Part shown: positions 1-21,900 of the stretch, piece after piece | Layout: every line of letters begins with the position of its first letter | Position numbering within the stretch: position 1 is the stretch's first letter | Assembly: GCA_964057225.1 (NCBI GenBank) | Contig: OZ059896.1 | Location: 19,034,001-19,098,000, forward strand | DNA length: 64,000 bases | Origin: Auanema rhodensis | Lineage: Eukaryota; Animalia; Nematoda | Direction: 5' to 3' | Notes under the pieces: generated by a model | Databases searched by the model: none | The model's input: only the letters and a program-made list of their open reading frames with translations | What the model was told of the DNA's origin: nothing | Made by a program: the position numbers and the translations under genes

Positions 1-425
1 CTCTACGTCTGCCAACGTTTCCTTTTTCCTATATTATTGACAGATTACTGAATTTAAACTCCTATATCAATCTTAAATTACCTTCTAAATCTTTTGAAAT
101 TAAATTAAAAATTATCTTAATTAAGATTTATTTTGAAATTCTTTCTACAAATCTTAATAAACTTTATAAAATTGAACTTAATATACGAGATGAGACATTT
201 TTGTTTACTTTAAGCTTACTCACATTCAAATAGTTGGCCCACGCGTACCAGCTGTTCGGCATGTGTAGTCAATAACAGCTGTTAAAATTCAAAAGTTTTC
301 AAACAGGCTTAAGGCACCATCTGTGATTCCTTATTTGTCTCTAAGCTGACATTAGTGATTATAATATTCAAATATCACGACAGACGGTCAATGGTTGTTT
401 ACCATAAGCGCTAACATCTGGTGTC

Positions 426-908
426 GTGACACATGGCTGGAGGCGGAGCTTGAAGCTTCAACGATCCTCCTTCATCAGACGCCATTGTCACAAACGTTTT
501 TACTGGAATCTAGTTGCTTCCAGTACGCGCTCTTATATTCATCTAACTGTATTCACCAGCCACCATGTCGGACTCGGACATCAGCGAGGACAACAAAGAT
601 TAGGAACAAGGATCACCAGAGCCATACCTTTTGTATGTCACACAACAACAAAGAAGAATGAACAACGGTACAATACACGAATTAGAACACAAAATAAAGA
701 AATTCAGGTTAATGACTTAGTTATGATAAAAGTGAATTCTACACGAAACAAACTAACACCTTCATTCGAAGGGCCTTATTTAGTTACAGCAGTTCAAAGA
801 TCTTTCGTCGTGGTTTAAACAGATAGAGGAAAAAGCAGAAGAGTACACAAGGACTTCGTCAAACCTTACCAACGGACAACATCTATTCCGGTTATCACAA
901 TTTCTTGA
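426..908 (+). pseudogene. Ty3/Gypsy pol (integrase) remnant: C-terminal GPY/F domain with a premature stop, possible Zn-finger fragments
   Basis: Translates RYNTRIRTQNKEIQVNDLVMIKVNSTRNKLTPSFEGPYLVTAVQRSFVVV*TDRGKSRRVHKDFVKPY..., the typical 'D.V......KL.P.(F/W).GPY.V ... VH....K.Y' pattern. In-frame TAA at 816-818; the frame closes at TGA 906-908. The 5' boundary is approximate. Confidence 0.85.
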
Positions 909-1497
909 AGGTAGTTTTTTTTAACAAAATCAAATTGTTGAAATTTTTCTTATTTTATTTTGTGCCATTTCTAATTGTAACACTTCTTTGTTGTTGATTG
1001 ATTTTCTCTGAGAAGTCTGCTATTGTTTTACAAAAGTTTGTTTTATTACTCCAACTCTCATTGAGTAGATTTTTTTCAACATTCTCTTGTGAATCATGCT
1101 ATTTTTTATGCTTAATCATTACTTGTATTCACCTTATGGACATTAGTCATACGGGTTAAACGAGTTTTCATTTTTTTTGTACAAAACGAGCTCGACCTAT
1201 TCTCAGGGTAACACCGTACCTGTACAACTCAAGAAAATGAACGACTATATCACAGTCGAATGGTTTAGAAGCAAAGCTCTCGTTTGCAAGCATTTCACTA
1301 CTCAAGTGAATGAAATAGAATCTACTCGATACTACATTTCGAATTCAACAAACTTGAAGAGACAATAGCTAAACTTTCAAATCGTATTGTATACATTTTT
1401 TTTTATCCACTACACCATGATTTTTTTTTCCAACATCCAACTATCTTAAAAAGTGAATTAATTTATTTTGTTTTTGAACGAGGACGTTCAACTTTTT

Positions 1498-1509
1498 AAG
1501 GTGGGGGGA
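1498..1509 (+). promoter_or_regulatory. Polypurine tract (copy 1)
   Basis: AAGGTGGGGGGA directly before the 3' LTR, preceded by a T-run. Confidence 0.9.
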
Positions 1510-1892
1510 TGTCACATCTGCAAGCACATGGTAAACATGTGCGCGCTATTCAAATAGCGGGAGCCTGAACAAGCCCCGCCCACAACATGGGGCACACATG
1601 GCACTCTTGCTTCTGGCCTAACCCAGATAGGTTGTCTTATAGCCATGTGAGTCTCATCTCTATATCATCTATATATATATACTCTATTTAATACTTTATT
1701 AGATCTCTTTATATTCTTTCTTAATGTAATTCTTATATTGTATTTTCTTGTTATCTGATAATGAATCTTTTTCTCTTTAAGTATTTGTCTTAATAAGGAA
1801 ATCGGGGCGTTCGGGTCTGCCTACCTAAGGAACAAGGTAGAAGTACATATATCTTCCGACCATGAAAAGACGGGAAGAAACAATATGTAACG
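1510..1892 (+). repeat. 3' LTR of copy 1 (383 bp)
   Basis: TGTCACA...TGTAACG, preceded by the PPT and followed by GCAC. Confidence 0.95.
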
Positions 1893-2598
1893 GCACTATA
1901 CTACATTGAGAAACGCTTAATACAAAAATTAGTTATGATCGTTTGAAAAATGATGCATTAGTGTATGTTGAGTTTCCATGTACACTCAACATTGCTTCCA
2001 AAAACATTTTGACAAAAATTTTTTCGAAAATTTTCAGAATAATTTAGCGAAAAGTAGATGTTTTCAGATTCCTTTTTTCAAGGCAAAGACGATGGACAAT
2101 GTTATTCAACGAAAAAATTAATTCTTCAGGGTGAAAATCGATGATATAAGTGTGAACTTATATCAGTTGATATCTCGGTGCATTTTTAAGCTAGCGCAAA
2201 TCTGATAACACAGATCGATGCAGCTTAAAAATCCGCATCGAATGCACTATACTACATTGAGAAACGCTTAATACAAAAATTAGTTATGATCGTTTGAAAA
2301 ATGATGCATTAGTGTATGTTGAGTTTCCATGTACACTCAACATTGCTTCCAAAAACATTTTGACAAAAATTTTTTCGAAAATTTTCAGAATAATTTAGCA
2401 AAAAGTAGATGTTTTCAGATTCCTTTTTTCAAGGCAAAGACGATGGACAATGATATTCAACGAAAAAATTAATTCTTCAGGGTGAAAATCGAGGATATAA
2501 GTGTGAACTTATATCAGTTGATATCTCGGTGCATTTTTAAGCTAGCGCAAATCAGATAACACAGATCGATGCAGCTTAAAAATCCGCATCGAATGCAC
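1893..2598. repeat. Two 351-bp satellite monomers (+4-bp TSD) between copies 1 and 2
   Basis: 706 bp = 2 x 351 + 4; same monomer as the main array. Confidence 0.98.
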
Positions 2599-2981
2599 TG
2601 TCACATCTGCAAGCACATGGTAAACATGTGCGCGCTATTCAAATAGCGGGAGCCTGAACAAGCCCCGCCCACAACATGGGGCACACATGGCACTCTTGCT
2701 TCTGGCCTAACCCAGATAGGTTGTCTTATAGCCATGTGAGTCTCATCTCTATATCATCTATATATATATACTCTATTTAATACTTTATTAGATCTCTTTA
2801 TATTCTTTCTTAATGTAATTCTTATATTGTATTTTCTTGTTATCTGATAATGAATCTTTTTCTCTTTAAGTATTTGTCTTAATAAGGAAATCGGGGCGTT
2901 CGGGTCTGCCTACCTAAGGAACAAGGTAGAAGTACATATATCTTCCGACCATGAAAAGACGGGAAGAAACAATATGTAACG
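2599..2981 (+). repeat. 5' LTR of copy 2 (383 bp)
   Basis: Preceded by GCAC and followed by the PBS TGGAGGTTCCACC. Confidence 0.95.
2759..2770 (+). promoter_or_regulatory. (TA)n run in the LTR, candidate TATA region (present in all seven LTRs)
   Basis: TATATATATATA lies about 160 bp into the LTR, at the boundary between the GC-richer motif-dense part and the T-rich part. A promoter role is inferred only from position. Confidence 0.35.
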
Positions 2982-2994
2982 TGGAGGTTCCACC
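2982..2994 (+). promoter_or_regulatory. Primer-binding site complementary to the tRNA-Gln 3' end (copy 2)
   Basis: TGGAGGTTCCACC directly after the 5' LTR is the reverse complement of ...GGUGGAACCU-CCA, the 3' end of eukaryotic cytosolic tRNA-Gln as I recall it. Confidence 0.88.
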
Positions 2995-3865
2995 TTGCTT
3001 ACTTTACTGTTAATTTATTGACATCAAGTTTACGAGACTCTTGGACTTAATTACCCAACAGTGAGGAGTAACCGAGCCGTGCACCATGATTTCCCCAAAA
3101 ATTATTTTGGCTACCACTTCTCCTCCGCTCAACAAAAACTGGGAGGTGTCTGAGACGTTTGGGGAAACTATCAGACAATAGTTTTGACGAGCGTTACCTT
3201 TTTGTTATGCACGCGCGTGCTATTTTGATTCATTACTTTATGATGTGAATGTCCAGTGTGGCAACAGAGCTCACTTTTTAGCTGAGTTGTTTGGAAGCTG
3301 GAGGCTGTTGGGATAATTTTATTTACGATTTTTGATTTTGATTCACATCCAAGGGTTCATCAGGGTTCTACTCCTGTTAACTCTTTTCTTATTAGTTCAG
3401 AGATAATAAGAATATTTAAATTCCTACCCACCCAAGTCCACTCTACGTCTGCCAACGTTTCCTTTTTCCTATATTATTGACAGATTACTGAATTTAAACT
3501 CCTATATCAATCTTAAATTACCTTCTAAATCTTTTGAAATTAAATTAAAAATTATCTTAATTAAGATTTATTTTGAAATTCTTTCTACAAATCTTAATAA
3601 ACTTTATAAAATTGAACTTAATATACGAGATGAGACATTTTTGTTTACTTTAAGCTTACTCACATTCAAATAGTTGGCCCACGCGTACCAGCTGTTCGGC
3701 ATGTGTAGTCAATAACAGCTGTTAAAATTCAAAAGTTTTCAAACAGGCTTAAGGCACCATCTGTGATTCCTTATTTGTCTCTAAGCTGACATTAGTGATT
3801 ATAATATTCAAATATCACGACAGACGGTCAATGGTTGTTTACCATAAGCGCTAACATCTGGTGTC

Positions 3866-4348
3866 GTGACACATGGCTGGAGGCGGAGCTTGAAGCTTCA
3901 ACGATCCTCCTTCATCAGACGCCATTGTCACAAACGTTTTTACTGGAATCTAGTTGCTTCCAGTACGCGCTCTTATATTCATCTAACTGTATTCACCAGC
4001 CACCATGTCGGACTCGGACATCAGCGAGGACAACAAAGATTAGGAACAAGGATCACCAGAGCCATACCTTTTGTATGTCACACAACAACAAAGAAGAATG
4101 AACAACGGTACAATACACGAATTAGAACACAAAATAAAGAAATTCAGGTTAATGACTTAGTTATGATAAAAGTGAATTCTACACGAAACAAACTAACACC
4201 TTCATTCGAAGGGCCTTATTTAGTTACAGCAGTTCAAAGATCTTTCGTCGTGGTTTAAACAGATAGAGGAAAAAGCAGAAGAGTACACAAGGACTTCGTC
4301 AAACCTTACCAACGGACAACATCTATTCCGGTTATCACAATTTCTTGA
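3866..4348 (+). pseudogene. Integrase remnant (copy 2)
   Basis: Same sequence as 426-908, with the same premature stop. Confidence 0.85.
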
Positions 4349-4938
4349 AGGTAGTTTTTTTTAACAAAATCAAATTGTTGAAATTTTTCTTATTTTATTT
4401 TGTGCCATTTCTAATTGTAACACTTCTTTGTTGTTGATTGATTTTCTCTGAGAAGTCTGCTATTGTTTTACAAAAGTTTGTTTTATTACTCCAACTCTCA
4501 TTGAGTAGATTTTTTTCAACATTCTCTTGTGAATCATGCTATTTTTTATGCTTAATCATTACTTGTATTCACCTTATGGACATTAGTCATACGGGTTAAA
4601 CGAGTTTTCATTTTTTTTGTACAAAACGAGCTCGACCTATTCTCAGGGTAACACCGTACCTGTACAACTCAAGAAAATGAACGACTATATCACAGTCGAA
4701 TGGTTTAGAAGCAAAGCTCTCGTTTGCAAGCATTTCACTACTCAAGTGAATGAAATAGAATCTACTCGATACTACATTTCGAATTCAACAAACTTGAAGA
4801 GACAATAGCTAAACTTTCAAATCGTATTGTATACATTTTTTTTTTATCCACTACACCATGATTTTTTTTTCCAACATCCAACTATCTTAAAAAGTGAATT
4901 AATTTATTTTGTTTTTGAACGAGGACGTTCAACTTTTT

Positions 4939-4950
4939 AAGGTGGGGGGA
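4939..4950 (+). promoter_or_regulatory. Polypurine tract (copy 2)
   Basis: AAGGTGGGGGGA before the 3' LTR. Confidence 0.9.
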
Positions 4951-5333
4951 TGTCACATCTGCAAGCACATGGTAAACATGTGCGCGCTATTCAAATAGCG
5001 GGAGCCTGAACAAGCCCCGCCCACAACATGGGGCACACATGGCACTCTTGCTTCTGGCCTAACCCAGATAGGTTGTCTTATAGCCATGTGAGTCTCATCT
5101 CTATATCATCTATATATATATACTCTATTTAATACTTTATTAGATCTCTTTATATTCTTTCTTAATGTAATTCTTATATTGTATTTTCTTGTTATCTGAT
5201 AATGAATCTTTTTCTCTTTAAGTATTTGTCTTAATAAGGAAATCGGGGCGTTCGGGTCTGCCTACCTAAGGAACAAGGTAGAAGTACATATATCTTCCGA
5301 CCATGAAAAGACGGGAAGAAACAATATGTAACG
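4951..5333 (+). repeat. 3' LTR of copy 2
   Basis: Direct repeat of 2599-2981, preceded by the PPT. Confidence 0.95.
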
Positions 5334-6039
5334 GCACTATACTACATTGAGAAACGCTTAATACAAAAATTAGTTATGATCGTTTGAAAAATGATGCATT
5401 AGTGTATGTTGAGTTTCCATGTACACTCAACATTGCTTCCAAAAACATTTTGACAAAAATTTTTTCGAAAATTTTCAGAATAATTTAGCGAAAAGTAGAT
5501 GTTTTCAGATTCCTTTTTTCAAGGCAAAGACGATGGACAATGTTATTCAACGAAAAAATTAATTCTTCAGGGTGAAAATCGATGATATAAGTGTGAACTT
5601 ATATCAGTTGATATCTCGGTGCATTTTTAAGCTAGCGCAAATCTGATAACACAGATCGATGCAGCTTAAAAATCCGCATCGAATGCACTATACTACATTG
5701 AGAAACGCTTAATACAAAAATTAGTTATGATCGTTTGAAAAATGATGCATTAGTGTATGTTGAGTTTCCATGTACACTCAACATTGCTTCCAAAAACATT
5801 TTGACAAAAATTTTTTCGAAAATTTTCAGAATAATTTAGCAAAAAGTAGATGTTTTCAGATTCCTTTTTTCAAGGCAAAGACGATGGACAATGATATTCA
5901 ACGAAAAAATTAATTCTTCAGGGTGAAAATCGAGGATATAAGTGTGAACTTATATCAGTTGATATCTCGGTGCATTTTTAAGCTAGCGCAAATCAGATAA
6001 CACAGATCGATGCAGCTTAAAAATCCGCATCGAATGCAC
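5334..6039. repeat. Two 351-bp satellite monomers (+4-bp TSD) between copies 2 and 3
   Basis: 706 bp; by eye identical to 1893-2598. Confidence 0.98.
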
Positions 6040-6422
6040 TGTCACATCTGCAAGCACATGGTAAACATGTGCGCGCTATTCAAATAGCGGGAGCCTGAAC
6101 AAGCCCCGCCCACAACATGGGGCACACATGGCACTCTTGCTTCTGGCCTAACCCAGATAGGTTGTCTTATAGCCATGTGAGTCTCATCTCTATATCATCT
6201 ATATATATATACTCTATTTAATACTTTATTAGATCTCTTTATATTCTTTCTTAATGTAATTCTTATATTGTATTTTCTTGTTATCTGATAATGAATCTTT
6301 TTCTCTTTAAGTATTTGTCTTAATAAGGAAATCGGGGCGTTCGGGTCTGCCTACCTAAGGAACAAGGTAGAAGTACATATATCTTCCGACCATGAAAAGA
6401 CGGGAAGAAACAATATGTAACG
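6040..6422 (+). repeat. 5' LTR of copy 3
   Basis: Same 383-bp sequence, followed by the PBS. Confidence 0.95.
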
Positions 6423-6435
6423 TGGAGGTTCCACC
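6423..6435 (+). promoter_or_regulatory. Primer-binding site, tRNA-Gln (copy 3)
   Basis: TGGAGGTTCCACC after the 5' LTR. Confidence 0.88.
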
Positions 6436-7306
6436 TTGCTTACTTTACTGTTAATTTATTGACATCAAGTTTACGAGACTCTTGGACTTAATTACCCAAC
6501 AGTGAGGAGTAACCGAGCCGTGCACCATGATTTCCCCAAAAATTATTTTGGCTACCACTTCTCCTCCGCTCAACAAAAACTGGGAGGTGTCTGAGACGTT
6601 TGGGGAAACTATCAGACAATAGTTTTGACGAGCGTTACCTTTTTGTTATGCACGCGCGTGCTATTTTGATTCATTACTTTATGATGTGAATGTCCAGTGT
6701 GGCAACAGAGCTCACTTTTTAGCTGAGTTGTTTGGAAGCTGGAGGCTGTTGGGATAATTTTATTTACGATTTTTGATTTTGATTCACATCCAAGGGTTCA
6801 TCAGGGTTCTACTCCTGTTAACTCTTTTCTTATTAGTTCAGAGATAATAAGAATATTTAAATTCCTACCCACCCAAGTCCACTCTACGTCTGCCAACGTT
6901 TCCTTTTTCCTATATTATTGACAGATTACTGAATTTAAACTCCTATATCAATCTTAAATTACCTTCTAAATCTTTTGAAATTAAATTAAAAATTATCTTA
7001 ATTAAGATTTATTTTGAAATTCTTTCTACAAATCTTAATAAACTTTATAAAATTGAACTTAATATACGAGATGAGACATTTTTGTTTACTTTAAGCTTAC
7101 TCACATTCAAATAGTTGGCCCACGCGTACCAGCTGTTCGGCATGTGTAGTCAATAACAGCTGTTAAAATTCAAAAGTTTTCAAACAGGCTTAAGGCACCA
7201 TCTGTGATTCCTTATTTGTCTCTAAGCTGACATTAGTGATTATAATATTCAAATATCACGACAGACGGTCAATGGTTGTTTACCATAAGCGCTAACATCT
7301 GGTGTC

Positions 7307-7789
7307 GTGACACATGGCTGGAGGCGGAGCTTGAAGCTTCAACGATCCTCCTTCATCAGACGCCATTGTCACAAACGTTTTTACTGGAATCTAGTTGCTT
7401 CCAGTACGCGCTCTTATATTCATCTAACTGTATTCACCAGCCACCATGTCGGACTCGGACATCAGCGAGGACAACAAAGATTAGGAACAAGGATCACCAG
7501 AGCCATACCTTTTGTATGTCACACAACAACAAAGAAGAATGAACAACGGTACAATACACGAATTAGAACACAAAATAAAGAAATTCAGGTTAATGACTTA
7601 GTTATGATAAAAGTGAATTCTACACGAAACAAACTAACACCTTCATTCGAAGGGCCTTATTTAGTTACAGCAGTTCAAAGATCTTTCGTCGTGGTTTAAA
7701 CAGATAGAGGAAAAAGCAGAAGAGTACACAAGGACTTCGTCAAACCTTACCAACGGACAACATCTATTCCGGTTATCACAATTTCTTGA
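7307..7789 (+). pseudogene. Integrase remnant (copy 3)
   Basis: Same sequence as 426-908. Confidence 0.85.
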
Positions 7790-8379
7790 AGGTAGTTTTT
7801 TTTAACAAAATCAAATTGTTGAAATTTTTCTTATTTTATTTTGTGCCATTTCTAATTGTAACACTTCTTTGTTGTTGATTGATTTTCTCTGAGAAGTCTG
7901 CTATTGTTTTACAAAAGTTTGTTTTATTACTCCAACTCTCATTGAGTAGATTTTTTTCAACATTCTCTTGTGAATCATGCTATTTTTTATGCTTAATCAT
8001 TACTTGTATTCACCTTATGGACATTAGTCATACGGGTTAAACGAGTTTTCATTTTTTTTGTACAAAACGAGCTCGACCTATTCTCAGGGTAACACCGTAC
8101 CTGTACAACTCAAGAAAATGAACGACTATATCACAGTCGAATGGTTTAGAAGCAAAGCTCTCGTTTGCAAGCATTTCACTACTCAAGTGAATGAAATAGA
8201 ATCTACTCGATACTACATTTCGAATTCAACAAACTTGAAGAGACAATAGCTAAACTTTCAAATCGTATTGTATACATTTTTTTTTTATCCACTACACCAT
8301 GATTTTTTTTTCCAACATCCAACTATCTTAAAAAGTGAATTAATTTATTTTGTTTTTGAACGAGGACGTTCAACTTTTT

Positions 8380-8391
8380 AAGGTGGGGGGA
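8380..8391 (+). promoter_or_regulatory. Polypurine tract (copy 3)
   Basis: AAGGTGGGGGGA before the 3' LTR. Confidence 0.9.
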
Positions 8392-8774
8392 TGTCACATC
8401 TGCAAGCACATGGTAAACATGTGCGCGCTATTCAAATAGCGGGAGCCTGAACAAGCCCCGCCCACAACATGGGGCACACATGGCACTCTTGCTTCTGGCC
8501 TAACCCAGATAGGTTGTCTTATAGCCATGTGAGTCTCATCTCTATATCATCTATATATATATACTCTATTTAATACTTTATTAGATCTCTTTATATTCTT
8601 TCTTAATGTAATTCTTATATTGTATTTTCTTGTTATCTGATAATGAATCTTTTTCTCTTTAAGTATTTGTCTTAATAAGGAAATCGGGGCGTTCGGGTCT
8701 GCCTACCTAAGGAACAAGGTAGAAGTACATATATCTTCCGACCATGAAAAGACGGGAAGAAACAATATGTAACG
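8392..8774 (+). repeat. 3' LTR of copy 3
   Basis: Same 383-bp sequence, preceded by the PPT. Confidence 0.95.
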
Positions 8775-10182
8775 GCACTATACTACATTGAGAAACGCTT
8801 AATACAAAAATTAGTTATGATCGTTTGAAAAATGATGCATTAGTGTATGTTGAGTTTCCATATACACTCAACATTGCTTCCAAAAACATTTTGACAAAAA
8901 TTTTTTCGAAAATTTTCAGAATAATTTAGCGAAAAGTAGATGTTTTCAGATTCCTTTTTTCAAGGCAAAGACGATGGACAATGTTATTCAACGAAAAAAT
9001 TAATTCTTCAGGGTGAAAATCGATGATATAAGTGTGAACTTATATCAGTTGATATCTCGGTGCATTTTTAAGCTAGCGCAAATCTGATAACACAGATCGA
9101 TGCAGCTTAAAAATCCGCATCGAATGCACTATACTACATTGAGAAACGCTTAATACAAAAATTAGTTATGATCGTTTGAAAAATGATGCATTAGTGTATG
9201 TTGAGTTTCCATGTACACTCAACATTGCTTCCAAAAACATTTTGACAAAAATTTTTTCGAAAATTTTCAGAATAATTTAGCAAAAAGTAGATGTTTTCAG
9301 ATTCCTTTTTTCAAGGCAAAGACGATGGACAATGTTATTCAACGAAAAAATTAATTCTTCAGGGTGAAAATCGAGGATATAAGTGTGAACTTATATCAGT
9401 TGATATCTCGGTGCATTTTTAAGCTAGCGCAAATCTGATAACACAGATCGATGCAGCTTAAAAATCCGCATCGAATGCACTATACTACATTGAGAAACGC
9501 TTAATACAAAAATTAGTTATGATCGTTTGAAAAATGATGCATTAGTGTATGTTGAGTTTCCATGTACACTCAACATTGCTTCCAAAAACATTTTGACAAA
9601 AATTTTTTCGAAAAGTTTCAAGATAATTTAGCGAAAAGTAGATGTTTTTAGATTCCTTTTTTCAAGGCAAAGACGATGGACAATGATATTCAACGAAAAA
9701 ATTAATTCTTCAGGGTGAAAATCGAGGATATAAGTGTGAACTTATATCAGTTGATATCTCGGTGCATTTTTAAGCTAGCGCAAATCTGATAACACAGATC
9801 GATGCAGCTTAAAAATCCGCATCGAATGCACTATACTACATTGAGAAACGCTTAATACAAAAATTAGTTATGATCGTTTGAAAAATGATGCATTAGTGTA
9901 TGTTGAGTTTCCATGTACACTCAACATTGCTTCCAAAAACATTTTGACAAAAATTTTTTCGAAAAGTTTCAAGATAATTTAGCGAAAAGTAGATGTTTTT
10001 AGATTCCTTTTTTCAAGGCAAAGACGATGGACAATGATATTCAACGAAAAAATTAATTCTTCAGGGTGAAAATCGAGGATATAAGTGTGAACTTATATCA
10101 GTTGATATCTCGGTGCATTTTTAAGCTAGCGCAAATCAGATAACACAGATCGATGCAGCTTAAAAATCCGCATCGAATGCAC
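8775..10182. repeat. Four 351-bp satellite monomers (+4-bp TSD) between copies 3 and 4
   Basis: 1408 bp = 4 x 351 + 4. Confidence 0.98.
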
Positions 10183-10565
10183 TGTCACATCTGCAAGCAC
10201 ATGGTAAACATGTGCGCGCTATTCAAATAGCGGGAGCCTGAACAAGCCCCGCCCACAACATGGGGCACACATGGCACTCTTGCTTCTGGCCTAACCCAGA
10301 TAGGTTGTCTTATAGCCATGTGAGTCTCATCTCTATATCATCTATATATATATACTCTATTTAATACTTTATTAAATCTCTTTATATTCTTTCTTAATGT
10401 AATTCTTATATTGTATTTTCTTGTTATCTGATAATGAATCTTTTTCTCTTTAAGTATTTGTCTTAATAAGGAAATCGGGGCGTTCGGGTCTGCCTACCTA
10501 AGGAACAAGGTAGAAGTACATATATCTTCCGACCATGAAAAGACGGGAAGAAACAATATGTAACG
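10183..10565 (+). repeat. 5' LTR of copy 4
   Basis: Same 383-bp sequence with G>A at 10375, followed by the PBS. Confidence 0.95.
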
Positions 10566-10578
10566 TGGAGGTTCCACC
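10566..10578 (+). promoter_or_regulatory. Primer-binding site, tRNA-Gln (copy 4)
   Basis: TGGAGGTTCCACC after the 5' LTR. Confidence 0.88.
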
Positions 10579-11449
10579 TTGCTTACTTTACTGTTAATTT
10601 ATTGACATCAAGTTTACGAGACTCTTGGACTTAATTACCCAACAGTGAGGAGTAACCGAGCCGTGCACCATGATTTCCCCAAAAATTATTTTGGCTACCA
10701 CTTCTCCTCCGCTCAACAAAAACTGGGAGGTGTCTGAGACGTTTGGGGAAACTATCAGACAATAGTTTTGACGAGCGTTACCTTTTTGTTATGCACGCGC
10801 GTGCTATTTTGATTCATTACTTTATGATGTGAATGTCCAGTGTGGCAACAGAGCTCACTTTTTAGCTGAGTTGTTTGGAAGCTGGAGGCTGTTGGGATAA
10901 TTTTATTTACGATTTTTGATTTTGATTCACATCCAAGGGTTCATCAGGGTTCTACTCCTGTTAACTCTTTTCTTATTAGTTCAGAGATAATAAGAATATT
11001 TAAATTCCTACCCACCCAAGTCCACTCTACGTCTGCCAACGTTTCCTTTTTCCTATATTATTGACAGATTACTGAATTTAAACTCCTATATCAATCTTAA
11101 ATTACCTTCTAAATCTTTTGAAATTAAATTAAAAATTATCTTAATTAAGATTTATTTTGAAATTCTTTCTACAAATCTTAATAAACTTTATAAAATTGAA
11201 CTTAATATACGAGATGAGACATTTTTGTTTACTTTAAGCTTACTCACATTCAAATAGTTGGCCCACGCGTACCAGCTGTTCGGCATGTGTAGTCAATAAC
11301 AGCTGTTAAAATTCAAAAGTTTTCAAACAGGCTTAAGGCACCATCTGTGATTCCTTATTTGTCTCTAAGCTGACATTAGTGATTATAATATTCAAATATC
11401 ACGACAGACGGTCAATGGTTGTTTACCATAAGCGCTAACATCTGGTGTC

Positions 11450-11932
11450 GTGACACATGGCTGGAGGCGGAGCTTGAAGCTTCAACGATCCTCCTTCATC
11501 AGACGCCATTGTCACAAACGTTTTTACTGGAATCTAGTTGCTTCCAGTACGCGCTCTTATATTCATCTAACTGTATTCACCAGCCACCATGTCGGACTCG
11601 GACATCAGCGAGGACAACAAAGATTAGGAACAAGGATCACCAGAGCCATACCTTTTGTATGTCACACAACAACAAAGAAGAATGAACAACGGTACAATAC
11701 ACGAATTAGAACACAAAATAAAGAAATTCAGGTTAATGACTTAGTTATGATAAAAGTGAATTCTACACGAAACAAACTAACACCTTCATTCGAAGGGCCT
11801 TATTTAGTTACAGCAGTTCAAAGATCTTTCGTCGTGGTTTAAACAGATAGAGGAAAAAGCAGAAGAGTACACAAGGACTTCGTCAAACCTTACCAACGGA
11901 CAACATCTATTCCGGTTATCACAATTTCTTGA
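11450..11932 (+). pseudogene. Integrase remnant (copy 4)
   Basis: Same sequence as 426-908. Confidence 0.85.
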
Positions 11933-12522
11933 AGGTAGTTTTTTTTAACAAAATCAAATTGTTGAAATTTTTCTTATTTTATTTTGTGCCATTTCTAATT
12001 GTAACACTTCTTTGTTGTTGATTGATTTTCTCTGAGAAGTCTGCTATTGTTTTACAAAAGTTTGTTTTATTACTCCAACTCTCATTGAGTAGATTTTTTT
12101 CAACATTCTCTTGTGAATCATGCTATTTTTTATGCTTAATCATTACTTGTATTCACCTTATGGACATTAGTCATACGGGTTAAACGAGTTTTCATTTTTT
12201 TTGTACAAAACGAGCTCGACCTATTCTCAGGGTAACACCGTACCTGTACAACTCAAGAAAATGAACGACTATATCACAGTCGAATGGTTTAGAAGCAAAG
12301 CTCTCGTTTGCAAGCATTTCACTACTCAAGTGAATGAAATAGAATCTACTCGATACTACATTTCGAATTCAACAAACTTGAAGAGACAATAGCTAAACTT
12401 TCAAATCGTATTGTATACATTTTTTTTTTATCCACTACACCATGATTTTTTTTTCCAACATCCAACTATCTTAAAAAGTGAATTAATTTATTTTGTTTTT
12501 GAACGAGGACGTTCAACTTTTT

Positions 12523-12534
12523 AAGGTGGGGGGA
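12523..12534 (+). promoter_or_regulatory. Polypurine tract (copy 4)
   Basis: AAGGTGGGGGGA before the 3' LTR. Confidence 0.9.
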
Positions 12535-12917
12535 TGTCACATCTGCAAGCACATGGTAAACATGTGCGCGCTATTCAAATAGCGGGAGCCTGAACAAGCC
12601 CCGCCCACAACATGGGGCACACATGGCACTCTTGCTTCTGGCCTAACCCAGATAGGTTGTCTTATAGCCATGTGAGTCTCATCTCTATATCATCTATATA
12701 TATATACTCTATTTAATACTTTATTAGATCTCTTTATATTCTTTCTTAATGTAATTCTTATATTGTATTTTCTTGTTATCTGATCATGAATCTTTTTCTC
12801 TTTAAGTATTTGTCTTAATAAGGAAATCGGGGCGTTCGGGTCTGCCTACCTAAGGAACAAGGTAGAAGTACATATATCTTCCGACCATGAAAAGACGGGA
12901 AGAAACAATATGTAACG
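12535..12917 (+). repeat. 3' LTR of copy 4
   Basis: Same 383-bp sequence with A>C at 12785; abuts the long satellite array. Confidence 0.95.
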
Positions 12918-15900
12918 GCACTATACTACATTGAGAAACGCTTAATACAAAAATTAGTTATGATCGTTTGAAAAATGATGCATTAGTGTATGTTGAGTTT
13001 CCATATACACTCAACATTGCTTCCAAAAACATTTTGACAAAAATTTTTTCGAAAATTTTCAGAATAATTTAGCGAAAAGTAGATGTTTTCAGATTCCTTT
13101 TTTCAAGGCAAAGACGATGGACAATGTTATTCAACGAAAAAATTAATTCTTCAGGGTGAAAATCGATGATATAAGTGTGAACTTATATCAGTTGATATCT
13201 CGGTGCATTTTTAAGCTAGCGCAAATCTGATAACACAGATCGATGCAGCTTAAAAATCCGCATCGAATGCACTATACTACATTGAGAAACGCTTAATACA
13301 AAAATTAGTTATGATCGTTTGAAAAATGATGCATTAGTGTATGTTGAGTTTCCATGTACACTCAACATTGCTTCCAAAAACATTTTGACAAAAATTTTTT
13401 CGAAAATTTTCAGAATAATTTAGCAAAAAGTAGATGTTTTCAGATTCCTTTTTTCAAGGCAAAGACGATGGACAATGTTATTCAACGAAAAAATTAATTC
13501 TTCAGGGTGAAAATCGAGGATATAAGTGTGAACTTATATCAGTTGATATCTCGGTGCATTTTTAAGCTAGCGCAAATCTGATAACACAGATCGATGCAGC
13601 TTAAAAATCCGCATCGAATGCACTATACTACATTGAGAAACGCTTAATCCAAAAATTAGTTATGATCGTTTGAAAAATGATGCATTAGTGTATGTTGAGT
13701 TTCCATGTACACTCAACATTGCTTCCAAAAACATTTTGACAAAAATTTTTTCGAAAAATTTCAAAATAATTTAGCAAAAAGTAGATGTTTTCAGATTCCT
13801 TTTTTCAAGGCAAAGACGATGGACAATGTTATTCAACGAAAAAATTAATTCTTCAGGGTGAAAATCGAGGATATGAGTGTGAACTTATATCAGTTGATAT
13901 CTCGGTGCATTTTTAAGCTAGCGCAAATCTGATAACACAGATCGACGCAGCTTAAAAATCCGCATCGAATGCACTATACTACATTGAGAAACGCTTAATA
14001 CAAAAATTAGTTATGATCGTTTGAAAAATGATGCATTAGTGTATGTTGAGTTTCCATGTACACTCAACATTGCTTCCAAAAACATTTTGACAAAAATTTT
14101 TTCGAAAATTTTCAGAATAATTTAGCAAAAAGTAGATGTTTTCAGATTCCTTTTTTCAAGGCAAAGACGATGGACAATGTTATTCAACGAAAAAATTAAT
14201 TCTTCAGGGTGAAAATCGAGGATATAAGTGTGAACTTATATCAGTTGATATCTCGGTGCATTTTTAAGCTAGCGCAAATCTGATAACACAGATCGATGCA
14301 GCTTAAAAATCCGCATCGAATGCACTATACTACATTGAGAAACGCTTAATCCAAAAATTAGTTATGATCGTTTGAAAAATGATGCATTAGTGTATGTTGA
14401 GTTTCCATGTACACTCAACATTGCTTCCAAAAACATTTTGACAAAAATTTTTTCGAAAAATTTCAAAATAATTTAGCAAAAAGTAGATGTTTTCAGATTC
14501 CTTTTTTCAAGGCAAAGACGATGGACAATGTTATTCAACGAAAAAATTAATTCTTCAGGGTGAAAATCGAGGATATGAGTGTGAACTTATATCAGTTGAT
14601 ATCTCGGTGCATTTTTAAGCTAGCGCAAATCTGATAACACAGATCGACGCAGCTTAAAAATCCGCATCGAATGCACTATACTACATTGAGAAACGCTTAA
14701 TACGAAAATTAGTTATGATCGTTTGAAAAATGATGCATTAGTGTATGTTGAGTTTCCATGTACACTCAACATTGCTTCCAAAAACATTTTGACAAAAATT
14801 TTTTCGAAAAGTTTCAAGATAATTTAGCGAAGAGTAGATGTTTTTAGATTCCTTTTTTCAAGGCAAAGACGATGGACAATGATATTCAACGAAAAAATTA
14901 ATTCTTCAGGGTGAAAATCGAGGATATAAGTGTGAACTTATATCAGTTGATATCTCGGTGCATTTTTAAGCTAGCGCAAATCTGATAACACAGATCGATG
15001 CAGCTTAAAAATCCGCATCGAATGCACTATACTACATTGAGAAACGCTTAATACAAAAATTAGTTATGATCGTTTGAAAAATGATGCATTAGTGTATGTT
15101 GAGTTTCCATGTACACTCAACATTGCTTCCAAAAACATTTTGACAAAAATTTTTTCGAAAAATTTCAAAATAATTTAGCAAAAAGTAGATGTTTTCAGAT
15201 TCCTTTTTTCAAGGCAAAGACGATGGACAATGATATTCAACGAAAAAATTAATTCTTCAGGGTGAAAATCGAGGATATAAGTGTGAACTTATATCAGTTG
15301 ATATCTCGGTGCATTTTTAAGCTAGCGCAAATCTGATAACACAGATCGATGCAGCTTAAAAATCCGCATCGAATGCACTATACTACATTAAGAAACGCTT
15401 AATACAAAAATTAGTTATGATCGTTTGAAAAATGATGCATTAGTGTATGTTGAGTTTCCATGTACACTCAACATTGCTTCCAAAAACATTTTGACAAAAA
15501 TTTTTTCGAAAAATTTCAAAATAATTTAGCAAAAAGTAGATGTTTTCAGATTCCTTTTTTCAAGGCAAAGACGATGGACAATGTTATTCAACGAAAAAAT
15601 TAATTCTTCAGGGTGAAAATCGAGGATATGAGTGTGAACTTATATCAGTTGATATCTCGGTGCATTTTTAAGCTAGCGCAAATCTGATAACACAGATCGA
15701 CGCAGCTTAAAAATCCGCATCGAATGCACTATACTACATTGAGAAACGCTTAATACGAAAATTAGTTATGATCGTTTGAAAAATGATGCATTAGTGTATG
15801 TTGAGTTTCCATGTACACTCAACATTGCTTCCAAAAACATTTTGACAAAAATTTTTTCGAAAAGTTTCAAGATAATTTAGCGAAAAGTAGATGTTTTTAG

Positions 15901-18900
15901 ATTCCTTTTTTCAAGGCAAAGACGATGGACAATGATATTCAACGAAAAAATTAATTCTTCAGGGTGAAAATCGAGGATATAAGTGTGAACTTATATCAGT
16001 TGATATCTCGGTGCATTTTTAAGCTAGCGCAAATCTGATAACACAGATCGATGCAGCTTAAAAATCCGCATCGAATGCACTATACTACATTGAGAAACGC
16101 TTAATACAAAAATTAGTTATGATCGTTTGAAAAATGATGCATTAGTGTATGTTGAATTTCCATGTACACTCAACATTGCTTCCAAAAACATTTTGACAAA
16201 AATTTTTTCGAAAAATTTCAAAATAATTTAGCAAAAAGTAGATGTTTTCAGATTCCTTTTTTCAAGGCAAAGACGATGGACAATGATATTCAACGAAAAA
16301 ATTAATTCTTCAGGGTGAAAATCGAGGATATAAGTGTGAACTTATATCAGTTGATATCTCGGTGCATTTTTAAGCTAGCGCAAATCTGATAACACAGATC
16401 GATGCAGCTTAAAAATCCGCATCGAATGCACTATACTACATTGAGAAACGCTTAATACAAAAATTAGTTATGATCGTTTGAAAAATGATGCATTAGTGTA
16501 TGTTGAGTTTCCATGTACACTCAACATTGCTTCCAAAAACATTTTGACAAAAATTTTTTCGAAAAATTTCAAAATAATTTAGCAAAAAGTAGATGTTTTC
16601 AGATTCCTTTTTTCAAGGCAAAGACGATGGACAATGTTATTCAACGAAAAAATTAATTCTTCAGGGTGAAAATCGAGGATATGAGTGTGAACTTATATCA
16701 GTTGATATCTCGGTGCATTTTTAAGCTAGCGCAAATCTGATAACACAGATCGACGCAGCTTAAAAATCCGCATCGAATGCACTATACTACATTGAGAAAC
16801 GCTTAATACAAAAATTAGTTATGATCGTTTGAAAAATGATGCATTAGTGTATGTTGAGTTTCCATGTACACTCAACATTGCTTCCAAAAACATTTTGACA
16901 AAAATTTTTTCGAAAAATTTCAAAATAATTTAGCAAAAAGTAGATGTTTTCAGATTCCTTTTTTCAAGGCAAAGACGATGGACAATGTTATTCAACGAAA
17001 AAATTAATTCTTCAGGGTGAAAATCGAGGATATGAGTGTGAACTTATATCAGTTGATATCTCGGTGCATTTTTAAGCTAGCGCAAATCTGATAACACAGA
17101 TCGACGCAGCTTAAAAATCCGCATCGAATGCACTATACTACATTGAGAAACGCTTAATACAAAAATTAGTTATGATCGTTTGAAAAATGATGCATTAGTG
17201 TATGTTGAGTTTCCATGTACACTCAACATTGCTTCCAAAAACATTTCGACAAAAATTTTTTCGAAAAATTTCAAGATAATTTAGCAAAAAGTAGATGTTT
17301 TTAGATTCCTTTTTTCAAGGCAAAGACGATGGACAATGTTATTCAACAAAAAAATTAATTCTTCAGGGTGAAAATCGAGGATATAAGTGTGAACTTATAT
17401 CAGTTGATATCTCGGTGCATTTTTAAGCTAGCGCAAATCTGATAACACAGATCGACGCAGCTTAAAAATCCGCATCGAATGCACTATACTACATTGAGAA
17501 ACGCTTAATACAAAAATTAGTTATGATCGTTTGAAAAATGATGCATTAGTGTATGTTGAGTTTCCATGTACACTCAACATTGCTTCCAAAAACATTTTGA
17601 CAAAAATTTTTTCGAAAAATTTCAAGATAATTTAGCAAAAAGTAGATGTTTTTAGATTCCTTTTTTCAAGGCAAAGACGATGGACAATGTTATTCAACGA
17701 AAAAATTAATTCTTCAGGGTGAAAATCGAGGATATAAGTGTGAACTTATATCAGTTGATATCTCGGTGCATTTTTAAGCTAGCGCAAATCTGATAACACA
17801 GATCGACGCAGCTTAAAAATCCGCATCGAATGCACTATACTACACTGAGAAACGCTTAATACAAAAATTAGTTATGATCGTTTGAAAAATGATGCATTAG
17901 TGTATGTTGAGTTTCCATGTACACTCAACATTGCTTCCAAAAACATTTTGACAAAAATTTTTTCGAAAAATTTCAAAATAATTTAGCAAAAAGTAGATGT
18001 TTTCAGATTCCTTTTTTCAAGGCAAAGACGATGGACAATGTTATTCAACGAAACAATTAATTCTTCAGGGTGAAAATCGAGGATATGAGTGTGAACTTAT
18101 ATCAGTTGATATCTCGGTGCATTTTTAAGCTAGCGCAAATCTGATAACACAGATCGACGCAGCTTAAAATTCCGCATCGAATGCACTATACTACATTGAG
18201 AAACGCTTAATACAAAAATTAGTTATGATCGTTTGAAAAATGATGCATTAGTGTATGTTGAATTTCCATGTACACTCAACATTGCTTCCAAAAACATTTT
18301 GACAAAAATTTTTTCGAAAAATTTCAAAATAATTTAGCAAAAAGTAGATGTTTTCAGATTCCTTTTTTCAAGGCAAAGACGATGGACAATGTTATTCAAC
18401 GAAAAAATTAATTCTTCAGGGTGAAAATCGAGGATATAAGTGTGAACTTATATCAGTTGATATCTCGGTGCATTTTTAAGCTAGCGCAAATCTGATAACA
18501 CAGATCGACGCAGCTTAAAAATCCGCATCGAATGCACTATACTACATTGAGAAACGCTTAATACAAAAATTAGTTATGATTGTTTGAAAAATGATGCATT
18601 AGTGTATGTTGAGTTTCCATGTACACTCAACATTGCTTCCAAAAACATTTTGACAAAAATTTTTTCGAAAAATTTCAAAATAATTTAGCAAAAAGTAGAT
18701 GTTTTTAGATTCCTTTTTTCAAGGCAAAGACGATGGACAATGTTATTCAACGAAAAAATTAATTCTTCAGGGTGAAAATCGAGGATATAAGTGTGAACTT
18801 ATATCAGTTGATATCTCGGTGCATTTTTAAGCTAGCGCAAATCTGATAACACAGATCGACGCAGCTTAAAAATCCGCATCGAATGCACTATACTACATTG

Positions 18901-21900
18901 AGAAACGCTTAATACAAAAATTAGTTATGATCGTTTGAAAAATGATGCGTTAGTGTATGTTGAGTTTCCATGTACACTCAACATTGCTTCCAAAAACATT
19001 TTGACAAAAATTTTTTCGAAAAATTTCAAAATAATTTAGCAAAAAGTAGATGTTTTCAGATTCCTTTTTTCAAGGCAAAGACGATGGACAATGTTATTCA
19101 ACGAAACAATTAATTCTTCAGGGTGAAAATCGAGGATATGAGTGTGAACTTATATCAGTTGATATCTCGGTGCATTTTTAAGCTAGCGCAAATCTGATAA
19201 CACAGATCGACGCAGCTTAAAATTCCGCATCGAATGCACTATACTACATTGAGAAACGCTTAATACAAAAATTAGTTATGATCGTTTGAAAAATGATGCA
19301 TTAGTGTATGTTGAGTTTCCATGTACACTCAACATTGCTTCCAAAAACATTTTGACAAAAATTTTTTCGAAAAATTTCAAAATAATTTAGCAAAAAGTAG
19401 ATGTTTTTAGATTCCTTTTTTCAAGGCAAAGACGATGGACAATGTTATTCAACGAAAAAATTAATTCTTCAGGGTGAAAATCGAGGATATAAGTGTGAAC
19501 TTATATCAGTTGATATCTCGGTGCATTTTTAAGCTAGCGCAAATCTGATAACACAGATCGACGCAGCTTAAAAATCCGCATCGAATGCACTATACTACAT
19601 TGAGAAACGCTTAATACAAAAATTAGTTATGATTGTTTGAAAAATGATGCATTAGTGTATGTTGAGTTTCCATGTACACTCAACATTGCTTCCAAAAACA
19701 TTTTGACAAAAATTTTTTCGAAAAATTTCAAAATAATTTAGCAAAAAGTAGATGTTTTTAGATTCCTTTTTTCAAGGCAAAGACGATGGACAATGTTATT
19801 CAACGAAAAAATTAATTCTTCAGGGTGAAAATCGAGGATATAAGTGTGAACTTATATCAGTTGATATCTCGGTGCATTTTTAAGCTAGCGCAAATCTGAT
19901 AACACAGATCGACGCAGCTTAAAAATCCGCATCGAATGCACTATACTACATTGAGAAACGCTTAATACAAAAATTAGTTATGATCGTTTGAAAAATGATG
20001 CGTTAGTGTATGTTGAGTTTCCATGTACACTCAACATTGCTTCCAAAAACATTTTGACAAAAATTTTTTCGAAAAATTTCAAAATAATTTAGCAAAAAGT
20101 AGATGTTTTTAGATTCCTTTTTTCAAGGCAAAGACGATGGACAATGTTATTCAACGAAAAAATTAATTCTTCAGGGTGAAAATCGAGGATATAAGTGTGA
20201 ACTTATATCAGTTGATATCTCGGTGCATTTTTAAGCTAGCGCAAATCTGATAACACAGATCGACGCAGCTTAAAAATCCGCATCGAATGCACTATACTAC
20301 ATTGAGAAACGCTTAATACAAAAATTAGTTATGATCGTTTGAAAAATGATGCATTAGTGTATGTTGAGTTTCCATGTACACTCAACATTGCTTCCAAAAA
20401 CATTTCGACAAAAATTTTTTCGAAAAATTTCAAGATAATTTAGCAAAAAGTAGATGTTTTTAGATTCCTTTTTTCAAGGCAAAGACGATGGACAATGTTA
20501 TTCAACAAAAAAATTAATTCTTCAGGGTGAAAATCGAGGATATAAGTGTGAACTTATATCAGTTGATATCTCGGTGCATTATTAAGCTAGCGCAAATCTG
20601 ATAACACAGATCGACGCAGCTTAAAAATCCGCATCGAATGCACTATACTACATTGAGAAACGCTTAATACAAAAATTAGTTATGATCGTTTGAAAAATGA
20701 TGCATTAGTGTATGTTGAGTTTCCATGTACACTCAACATTGCTTCCAAAAACATTTCGACAAAAATTTTTTCGAAAAATTTCAAGATAATTTAGCAAAAA
20801 GTAGATGTTTTTAGATTTCTTTTTTCAAGGCAAAGACGATGGACAATGTTATTCAACAAAAAAATTAATTCTTCAGGGTGAAAATCGAGGATATAAGTGT
20901 GAACTTATATCAGTTGATATCTCGGTGCATTTTTAAGCTAGCGCAAATCTGATAACACAGATCGACGCAGCTTAAAAATCCGCATCGAATGCACTATACT
21001 ACATTGAGAAACGCTTAATACAAAAATTAGTTATGATCGTTTGAAAAATGATGCATTAGTGTATGTTGAGTTTCCATGTACACTCAACATTGCTTCCAAA
21101 AACATTTCGACAAAAATTTTTTCGAAAAATTTCAAGATAATTTAGCAAAAAGTAGATGTTTTTAGATTCCTTTTTTCAAGGCAAAGACGATGGACAATGT
21201 TATTCAACAAAAAAATTGATTCTTCAGGGTGAAAATCGAGGATATAAGTGTGAACTTATATCAGTTGATATCTCGGTGCATTTTTAAGCTAGCGCAAATC
21301 TGATAACACAGATCGACGCAGCTTAAAAATCCGCATCGAATGCACTATACTACATTGAGAAACGCTTAATACAAAAATTAGTTATGATCGTTTGAAAAAT
21401 GATGCATTAGTGTATGTTGAGTTTCCATGTACACTCAACATTGCTTCCAAAAACATTTCGACAAAAATTTTTTCGAAAAATTTCAAGATAATTTAGCAAA
21501 AAGTAGATGTTTTTAGATTCCTTTTTTCAAGGCAAAGACGATGGACAATGTTATTCAACGAAAAAATTAATTCTTCAGGGTGAAAATCGAGGATATAAGT
21601 GTGAACTTATATCAGTTGATATCTCGGTGCATTTTTAAGCTAGCGCAAATCTGATAACACAGATCGACGCAGCTTAAAAATCCGCATCGAATGCACTATA
21701 CTACATTGAGAAACGCTTAATACAAAAATTAGTTATGATCGTTTGAAAAATGATGCATTAGTGTATGTTGAGTTTCCATGTACACTCAACATTGCTTCCA
21801 AAAACATTTCGACAAAAATTTTTTCGAAAAATTTCAAGATAATTTAGCAAAAAGTAGATGTTTTTAGATTCCTTTTTTCAAGGCAAAGACGATGGACAAT

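What the first reader, a model, noticed from the sequence alone, without database searches (positions are those of the whole stretch)
1..12917. A defective LTR element has become the repeat unit of a composite retroelement-satellite macrosatellite
Seen: four copies of a 2.7-kb element in the same orientation, at the same nucleotide of the 351-bp monomer (GAAT-GCAC^TATAC), separated by whole numbers of monomers (2, 2, 4). Every copy keeps two complete LTRs and the TSD on both sides. This differs from ordinary tandem LTR arrays, which share an LTR between neighbours. Inference: the element is being amplified passively by satellite turnover (unequal exchange or break-induced replication), so an element with no coding capacity gains copies without transposing. 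The array probably continues left of the window. This is the best candidate for an undescribed system here: a new kb-scale higher-order repeat forming within a satellite array.
Basis: partly seen in the sequence, partly recalled or inferred. Interest (0 to 1): 0.8.

Follow-up and report, generated by a model that had tools for sequence, protein, structure and literature searches.

The report
Jumping gene copied along with satellite
One insertion of a gutted retrovirus-like jumping gene into a repetitive DNA array of the nematode Auanema rhodense was copied to four by the array's own recombination; this is real but is a known kind of event.

Summary
Four copies of a 2735-bp, coding-dead LTR element lie in one orientation. 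All sit at the same nucleotide of a 351-bp satellite, each with two 383-bp LTRs and the same 4-bp target duplication (GCAC). They are 2, 2 and 4 monomers apart.

The passive-amplification reading is supported. Both junction 30-mers occur exactly four times in the 181-Mb genome, all in this cluster, although the target sequence occurs at least 81,893 times. All four right flanks carry one rare monomer haplotype. The monomer between copies 1/2 and 2/3 is a recombinant of the monomer right of the element and the one left of it, with the crossover at monomer positions 173-210.

Three parts of the reading fail:
- The array does not continue left: there are four copies only, with two unit lengths.
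- The element family also transposes. At least 13 further short copies have their own target duplications in other satellites, next to about 10.1-kb relatives.
- The phenomenon is already described (ATHILA in Arabidopsis CEN180, TE/satellite units in Drosophila).

The same family shows at least two further co-duplications in other satellites of this genome. Other readers of this scan noted similar composites on other DNA of it. The genome is the Auanema rhodense germline assembly, and the satellite probably lies in soma-eliminated DNA. Reads were not available, so an assembly artefact is not excluded.

The parts
1..1892 (+). E1, first element copy (its first 842 bp lie left of the window; full span C4:19033159-19035892); 3' LTR at 1510-1892
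   Evidence: identical to E2/E3 except for 1 bp in a T run; the 5' junction was found at C4:19033145
1893..2598 (+). Spacer 1: monomer A (1893-2243), recombinant monomer B' (2244-2594) and the GCAC target-duplication copy (2595-2598)
2417..2452 (+). Crossover interval inside B'. Left of it B' carries the B0 markers (139T, 145G, 173C); right of it the C' markers (210A, 311A). The same interval recurs at 5858-5893.
   Evidence: the exact B' haplotype occurs only at 2244 and 5685 among 403 monomers
2599..5333 (+). E2, complete 2735-bp non-autonomous LTR element
2599..2981 (+). 5' LTR of E2 (383 bp; begins TGTCAC, ends GTAACG), followed by the primer-binding-like sequence TGGAGGTTCCACC from 2982
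   Evidence: all seven LTRs in the window differ at no more than 1 position
4005..4061 (+). Remnant of the gag start (19 codons, with an in-frame stop at codon 13), ending at the internal deletion breakpoint
   Evidence: homology to the long copies' gag ORF stops at internal position 1080
4088..4340 (+). Remnant of the 3' end of pol (integrase C-terminal SH3-like piece at 4130-4258); 4062-4087 is 26 nt of filler not found in the long copies
   Evidence: SH3_Tf2-1, E 0.014, below the Pfam cut-off; 98% identical to a stretch of the long copies that ends about 620 bp before their 3' LTR
4939..4950 (+). Polypurine tract AAGGTGGGGGGA directly before the 3' LTR (4951-5333)
5334..6039 (+). Spacer 2: A + B' + GCAC, identical to spacer 1
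6040..8774 (+). E3, identical to E2
8775..10182 (+). Spacer 3: monomers A* (A plus 88A), B0, C, C' and GCAC
10183..12917 (+). E4, with two private substitutions (position 193 of the 5' LTR, position 251 of the 3' LTR)
12918..64000 (+). Uninterrupted 351-bp satellite, beginning A*, B0, M3. The array runs from 78.4 kb left of the window to at least 20 kb past its right end.

Best explanation
A non-autonomous deletion derivative of a young LTR retrotransposon family of about 10.1 kb integrated once into a 351-bp satellite array of Auanema rhodense. It landed between a C'-type and an A-type monomer and made the 4-bp duplication GCAC. Out-of-register homologous recombination between satellite monomers on either side of the element then duplicated the element together with its flanking monomers. 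Unequal sister-chromatid or homologue exchange is the most likely form. At least three events are needed. One event in a 4-monomer register gave the 4143-bp unit E-A*-B0-C-C'. One exchange between monomer B0 (right of the element) and monomer C' (left of it) gave the 3441-bp unit E-A-B', where B' is the recombinant junction. One further exchange in that register added another copy. The element is a passenger and nothing it encodes is involved. Shown: the single origin, the recombinant junction, and that the family has no site preference. Inferred: the order of events and the exact recombination pathway.
For: (1) Each 30-nt junction (satellite/5' LTR and 3' LTR/satellite) occurs exactly 4 times in the 180.9-Mb genome, all in this cluster. 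A 31-mer spanning the target occurs at least 81,893 times. (2) All four right-flank monomers carry haplotype A (139T, 145G, 157G, 173C, 250T, 327T), found in only 5 of the other 399 monomers. All left-flank monomers carry 311A, found in 7 of 403. (3) B' at 2244 and 5685 has the B0 markers up to position 173 and the C' markers from position 210, as expected for a B0 x C' exchange, and is found nowhere else in 164 kb. (4) The copies differ by at most 2 substitutions, but are only 97-98% identical to the nearest copies elsewhere. (5) Other copies of the family have unrelated target duplications (caag, agcg, atct, gaag, gaat, cttg, ggat, caaa, gatt) in satellites of 404, 265, 259, 667, 377 and 247 bp. 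A long copy sits in the same 351-bp satellite at phase 174 in the opposite orientation. (6) The element-free parts of this array show local duplications of 2-7 monomers, so the process is active here. (7) The same family shows the same pattern elsewhere: C5, same duplication caag, gap 2024 = 5x404+4; C6, same duplication cacc, gap 3979 = 15x265+4.
Against: No reads were available, so the copy number rests on the assembly alone. U1 and U2 differ only by one homopolymer base and could in principle be one unit. The simple three-step history needs extra small changes: 88A is present in A* of units 3 and 4 but absent in units 1 and 2, and 32G is present in the two monomers left of E1 but absent in C and C' of spacer 3. 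Gene conversion or a more complex order of events is therefore also involved. Unequal crossover, gene-conversion copy-paste, break-induced replication and rolling-circle amplification of an excised circle all predict the same B' junction and cannot be told apart here.
Confidence: 0.85

Rival explanations
1. Assembly artefact: hifiasm over-expanded one or two real element-plus-monomer units into four within a near-identical repeat.
For: U1 and U2 (3440 and 3441 bp) differ only by 1 bp in a T run. The published assembly has only about 29x HiFi depth in the repeat blocks.
Against: Three of the four units can be told apart: E4 has 2 substitutions, A differs from A*, and B' differs from B0-C-C'. 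The whole cluster is 13.8 kb, within reach of single HiFi reads. The authors report that most reads map uniquely in the repeat blocks because of small-scale variation. At most the U1/U2 count is at risk.
Confidence: 0.07
2. Four independent integrations by an element that targets this exact nucleotide of the monomer.
For: The phase and orientation are identical in all four copies.
Against: There are at least 81,893 copies of the target but only these four adjacent junctions. The family's other target duplications share no consensus and lie in many different satellites. A relative sits in the same satellite at another phase and orientation (L023). The flanks share rare haplotypes and a recombinant monomer. 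The elements are nearly identical to each other but 2-3% different from all other copies.
Confidence: 0.01
3. The passenger principle is the same but the pathway is replicative. Either recombination between B0 and C' excised a circle (element + A + B') that was amplified by rolling-circle replication and reintegrated by homology, or break-induced replication or template switching re-copied the segment.
For: The B' junction is equally what a B0 x C' circle junction would look like. U1 and U2 are essentially identical, as expected from a single burst. Rolling-circle and eccDNA routes have been proposed for Drosophila satellite/TE units.
Against: Two different registers (4143 and 3441 bp) require separate events whatever the pathway. 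There are only two or three copies in the 3441-bp register. Local 2-7-monomer duplications scattered through the array fit ordinary unequal exchange.
Confidence: 0.12

Closest known systems
Post-integration duplication of ATHILA LTR retrotransposons inside Arabidopsis CEN180 satellite arrays (Naish et al. 2021, bioRxiv 10.1101/2021.05.30.446350; read)
   Same: An LTR element (or solo LTR) lying in a satellite array is copied after integration, on the same chromosome. The authors attribute this to the process that makes satellite higher-order repeats, or to gene conversion.
   Different: There the copies lie 8.9-538 kb apart and the elements are about 11-kb ATHILA in a centromere. Here the copies are directly tandem (3.4-4.1 kb apart) and the element is a 2.7-kb coding-dead derivative. 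The host is a holocentric-lineage nematode, the array is probably germline-restricted DNA, and the recombinant junction monomer is resolved to a 36-bp interval.
TE/satellite composite units in Drosophila melanogaster complex satellites (Khost et al. 2017, PMC5411766; read)
   Same: The 260-bp satellite is interrupted by identical Copia elements. A Rsp-Doc5-ProtoP unit is inserted at the same site in two places and is read as duplication of the whole unit rather than independent insertion.
   Different: Those copies are inverted or dispersed over about 100 kb, no integer-monomer tandem ladder is described, and the host and elements differ.
TE-derived tandem arrays formed by double insertion or LTR-LTR exchange and then expanded by unequal exchange (McGurk and Barbash 2018, PMC5932611; read)
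   Same: A tandem of TEs, once formed, expands by unequal exchange, and target duplications inside the junction reveal its origin.
   Different: In those models the tandem arises from two insertions or from LTR-LTR recombination (shared LTR). Here a single insertion is multiplied because the surrounding satellite supplies the homology, each copy keeps both LTRs, and whole monomers separate the copies.
Non-autonomous LTR deletion derivatives (LARD/TRIM-type parasites of autonomous LTR elements)
   Same: The element has LTRs, a primer-binding-like site, a polypurine tract and a 1.08-kb leader that are 98-99% identical to those of about 10.1-kb relatives. It has no intact ORF, and many dispersed copies have their own target duplications.
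   Different: It is a recent simple deletion (gag codon 19 joined to the end of pol through 26 nt of filler), not an old independent lineage.

Membership tests
LTR retrotransposon (structural definition) | Two direct long terminal repeats flanked by a short target-site duplication | tested here: met
   383-bp LTRs with 0-1 differences; GCAC on both sides of every copy
LTR retrotransposon (structural definition) | Primer-binding site beginning TGG right after the 5' LTR, and a polypurine tract right before the 3' LTR | tested here: inconclusive
   TGGAGGTTCCACC follows the 5' LTR and AAGGTGGGGGGA precedes the 3' LTR; no match to a host tRNA was tested
LTR retrotransposon (structural definition) | Canonical TG...CA LTR termini | tested here: not met
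   The LTR begins TGTCAC but ends GTAACG in all 13 full short copies examined
Ty3/gypsy (Metaviridae) lineage | pol with protease-RT-RNase H-integrase order, and gag of the Ty3 capsid type | tested here: inconclusive
   In the long copies gag hits Retrotrans_gag (E 3e-4) and Ty3_capsid (E 5e-3). The integrase remnant hits SH3_Tf2-1 (E 0.014). All are below the Pfam cut-offs.
Non-autonomous deletion derivative mobilised in trans | No intact coding capacity, cis signals shared with longer relatives, and dispersed copies with independent target duplications | tested here: met
   The longest ORF is 130 aa and spans only remnants. LTR and leader are 98-99% identical to about 10.1-kb copies. At least 9 distinct target duplications were found.
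Post-integration co-duplication of a TE with its host satellite | Copies share target duplication, phase, orientation and flanking monomer haplotypes, are spaced by whole monomers, and have a recombinant junction monomer | tested here: met
Macrosatellite / established higher-order repeat | Many tandem units of one regular kb-scale period | tested here: not met
   There are only four units, with periods 3440, 3441 and 4143 bp. Plain satellite lies on both sides, and there is no other copy of the junctions in the genome.
Tandem LTR array with shared LTRs (LTR-internal-LTR-internal-LTR) | Neighbouring elements share one LTR | tested here: not met
   Every copy has both LTRs, and 2 or 4 satellite monomers lie between copies
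Site-specific retrotransposon | Independent insertions at the same target sequence | tested here: not met

The most novel reading that the evidence does not exclude
In the soma-eliminated satellite blocks of Auanema rhodense, insertions cost the body nothing. This non-autonomous LTR family may therefore spread routinely by two routes at once: retrotransposition in trans, and hitch-hiking on satellite recombination. Three or more independent co-duplications were seen for this one family. Such TE-satellite composites might then be the seeds of new long-period, chromosome-specific tandem repeat families in this genome.
Probability: 0.15. Interest if true: 0.55.

Novelty: new member of a known kind. 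Interest (0 to 1): 0.3.

Why it matters
This is a clean, nucleotide-resolved example of how satellite turnover multiplies an embedded transposon. The exchange point is pinned to 36 bp of one monomer, and two different registers are visible in one 14-kb cluster.

It adds a nematode case, probably in germline-restricted DNA, to a process so far documented mainly in plant and fly centromeric or pericentromeric arrays. It also shows that recombination is active in these arrays.

It does not reveal a new mechanism or a new class of element.

Tried and rejected
- Leftward continuation of the array: rejected. 80 kb was fetched and only the rest of E1 was found.
- Site-specific targeting: rejected by the junction and target counts and by the family's other insertion sites.
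- Regular higher-order repeat in the 351-bp array: none found. Mean differences are flat across lags 1-20, with only scattered local 2-7-monomer duplications.
- Rfam scan of 1-14000: no match.
- Classification of the long relatives: gag only weakly recognised by Pfam. The roughly 600-aa region that follows gag in the same open frame has no Pfam, PDB-sequence or ESM-Atlas match.
- The large protein searches were not used, because the claim does not depend on them.
- Inverted repeats around the insertion site were looked at, but a single insertion cannot say anything about site choice.
Full report
**What is there**

Tandem Repeats Finder shows a 351-bp satellite (98-99% matches) filling 12918-64000. 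It also fills three short stretches at 1893-2599, 5334-6040 and 8775-10183. Between these stretches lie four copies of one element.

Exact string searches place the LTR starts at 1510, 2599, 4951, 6040, 8392, 10183 and 12535, and the LTR ends at 1892, 2981, 5333, 6422, 8774, 10565 and 12917. E2 (2599-5333), E3 (6040-8774) and E4 (10183-12917) are each 2735 bp with 383-bp LTRs. E1 is cut by the window edge.

Every 5' junction is ...GAATGCAC|TGTCAC. Every 3' junction is ...GTAACG|GCACTATAC. The uninterrupted monomer reads GAATGCACTATAC, so each copy is flanked by the 4-bp duplication GCAC.

The gaps are 706, 706 and 1408 bp, that is 2, 2 and 4 monomers plus the 4-bp duplicate. E2 and E3 are identical. 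E4 has two private substitutions, one per LTR. E1 differs by one base in a T run.

**The element**

After the 5' LTR comes TGGAGGTTCCACC, which looks like a primer-binding site. Before the 3' LTR comes AAGGTGGGGGGA, a polypurine tract. The internal 1969 bp holds no real gene, and the longest ORF is 130 aa. It consists of:
- a 1.08-kb leader;
- the first 19 codons of gag, with a stop at codon 13;
- 26 nt of filler;
- the last ~250 bp of pol, a weak integrase SH3-like match;
- about 600 bp of 3' untranslated sequence.

Longer relatives share the LTR and leader at 98-99% identity and continue into an open gag frame. Their LTR pairs are about 9.75 kb apart, giving elements of about 10.1 kb. At least 14 such pairs are in the listed part, and 38 hits to their gag-distal region are 96-100% identical to the query (34 of them at least 99%). 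The LTR 5' 30-mer occurs 146 times in the genome.

The 2.7-kb form is thus a young internal-deletion derivative. It is itself dispersed: 12 further full short copies (2685-2733 bp), plus a 2.56-kb variant, lie on contigs C1, C4, C5, C6 and C7. Ten of the 12 have matching 4-bp target duplications, in nine different sequences, since L002 and L004 share caag.

Membership in Ty3/gypsy is only suggested. All Pfam hits are below their cut-offs, and the pol of the long copies could not be fetched.

**Extent**

I fetched 80 kb upstream and 20 kb downstream. Upstream there are only the missing 842 bp of E1 and then 77.5 kb of the same satellite. Downstream the satellite continues. There are four copies, not more.

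Each junction 30-mer occurs exactly four times in the whole 180.9-Mb assembly, all in this cluster.

**One insertion or four?**

A 31-mer covering the target occurs at least 81,893 times in the genome with at most one mismatch. That corresponds to about 28.7 Mb of this satellite. The junction nevertheless exists only here.

The family's other insertions have unrelated target sequences in satellites of 404, 265, 259, 667, 377 and 247 bp. One long copy (L023, contig C3) sits in the same 351-bp satellite at monomer phase 174 in the opposite orientation. Site targeting is therefore excluded.

**The recombination footprint**

I cut 164 kb of the array into monomers in the phase of the insertion and scored variants against the majority base. 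The order is:

... Cg C'g | E1 | A B' | E2 | A B' | E3 | A* B0 C C' | E4 | A* B0 M3 ...

The haplotypes are:

| Monomer | Variants against the majority base | Frequency in 403 monomers |
|---|---|---|
| A | 139T, 145G, 157G, 173C, 250T, 327T | 9, four of them the right flanks of the elements |
| A* | A plus 88A | only the two monomers right of E3 and E4 |
| C' | 139G, 146G, 157G, 210A, 311A, 327T | 311A is in 7, four of them the left flanks |
| B0 | 139T, 145G, 173C, 327T | left markers (139T, 145G, 173C) in 66 |
| B' | 139T, 145G, 173C, then 210A, 311A, 327T | only at 2244 and 5685 |

B' is B0 to the left and C' to the right. This is exactly the product of an out-of-register exchange between the B0 two monomers right of an element and the C' immediately left of an element. 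The crossover lies between monomer positions 173 and 210, at window 2417-2452 and 5858-5893.

The 4143-bp unit (E3 to E4) needs a separate event in a 4-monomer register. The B0-C adjacency also occurs natively to the left of the cluster, so an exchange between two identical B0 monomers would leave no mark. A third event doubled the 3441-bp unit.

E4's private substitutions and the identity of E1-E3 fit this order of events. The distribution of 88A and 32G needs one or two extra small changes, by conversion or mutation, so the history is not fully resolved.

Element-free parts of the array contain local exact duplications of 2, 3, 4 and 7 monomers. The same process therefore acts without any element.

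**Recurrence in this genome**

The same family shows the same pattern elsewhere:
- On C5, L002 and L004 have the same duplication (caag), flanks 99.7-100% identical, and a gap of 2024 = 5x404+4.
- On C6, L027 and L028 have the same duplication (cacc) and a gap of 3979 = 15x265+4.
- On C7, L020 and L021 have identical flanks 8.7 kb apart.

Other readers of this scan noted comparable composites on other DNA of this genome. I did not test those notes.

**Organism and context**

A note from another agent suggested Auanema rhodense. I tested this in two ways. The published AT-1 FISH probe of A. rhodense (bioRxiv 10.64898/2026.08.27.747507) matches this assembly 138,553 times with a 176-bp period starting at a contig end. 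The published assembly span of 180.9 Mb equals that of this genome.

[quoted passage not shown] Two families, AT-1 and AT-2, make up the terminal blocks of all autosomes.

The 351-bp repeat is about 16% of the genome and lies toward both ends of contig C1. The window is at 19.03 of 23.58 Mb on C4. It is therefore probably AT-2 and probably soma-eliminated. This is inference, not shown.

**Artefact?**

The assembly is hifiasm on HiFi reads of an inbred line, with about 29x depth in the repeat blocks. Three of the four units are distinguishable, and the 13.8-kb cluster is within single-read reach. Only the U1/U2 count rests on one homopolymer base. I could not see reads, so I leave 7% for an artefact.

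**Comparison with what is known**

- Naish et al. [quoted passage not shown]
- Khost et al. 2017 report a 260-bp satellite interrupted by identical Copia elements, and a Rsp-Doc5-ProtoP unit duplicated as a whole.
- McGurk and Barbash 2018 treat the expansion of TE tandems by unequal exchange.

The present case is a tidy new instance in a nematode, with the junction resolved. It is not a new kind of system, and with four units of two lengths it is not yet a macrosatellite.

**Handling**

Copies were only compared and described.

Noticed in passing
L048:238-3312 (G000 C7:11177222-11180296): In the ~10.1-kb relatives an uninterrupted frame of at least 1025 aa runs from gag (~420 aa) into ~600 aa with a signal-peptide-like hydrophobic stretch and a Cys-rich region. 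This part has no Pfam, PDB-sequence or ESM-Atlas match. No protease or RT signal appears where one would expect it after gag.
   Followed up: partly
L010, L026, L007 (G000 C6:14.676-14.692 Mb): L010 and L026 have the same pair of mismatched flanks (ggtg / ctac), and L007 lies nearby in the opposite orientation with a target 7 bp away. This looks like inversion or exchange between inverted copies inside a 265-bp satellite, followed by duplication.
   Followed up: partly
G000 C5:9536059-9547783 (L005, L006): Three same-orientation copies lie in a 404-bp satellite. L005 and L006 share the identical 5' junction, but L006 has a different 3' flank and the gap (1970 bp) is 54 bp short of 5 monomers + 4. 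This suggests co-duplication followed by a small deletion.
   Followed up: partly
window 2975-2981 and all LTR ends: The LTR ends in ...GTAACG rather than the canonical ...CA in all 13 full short copies examined, while it starts with the canonical TG.
   Followed up: no
window 4062-4087: 26 nt at the internal deletion junction are absent from the long copies (their homology resumes at 4088). This is filler sequence of unknown origin, shared by the dispersed 2.73-kb copies.
   Followed up: no
window 36435 and 62389; also 16.6, 6.8 and 56.6 kb left of the window: Exact local duplications of 2, 3, 4 and 7 monomers are scattered in an array that otherwise has no regular higher-order period. 213 distinct sequences were found among 403 monomers, with a mean pairwise difference of about 2%.
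   Followed up: yes
whole genome G000: The 351-bp repeat has at least 81,893 copies (~28.7 Mb, ~16% of the assembly) in both orientations and toward both ends of contig C1. The published AT-1 probe marks a 176-bp repeat with 138,553 hits. The 351-bp family is probably the published AT-2.
   Followed up: partly
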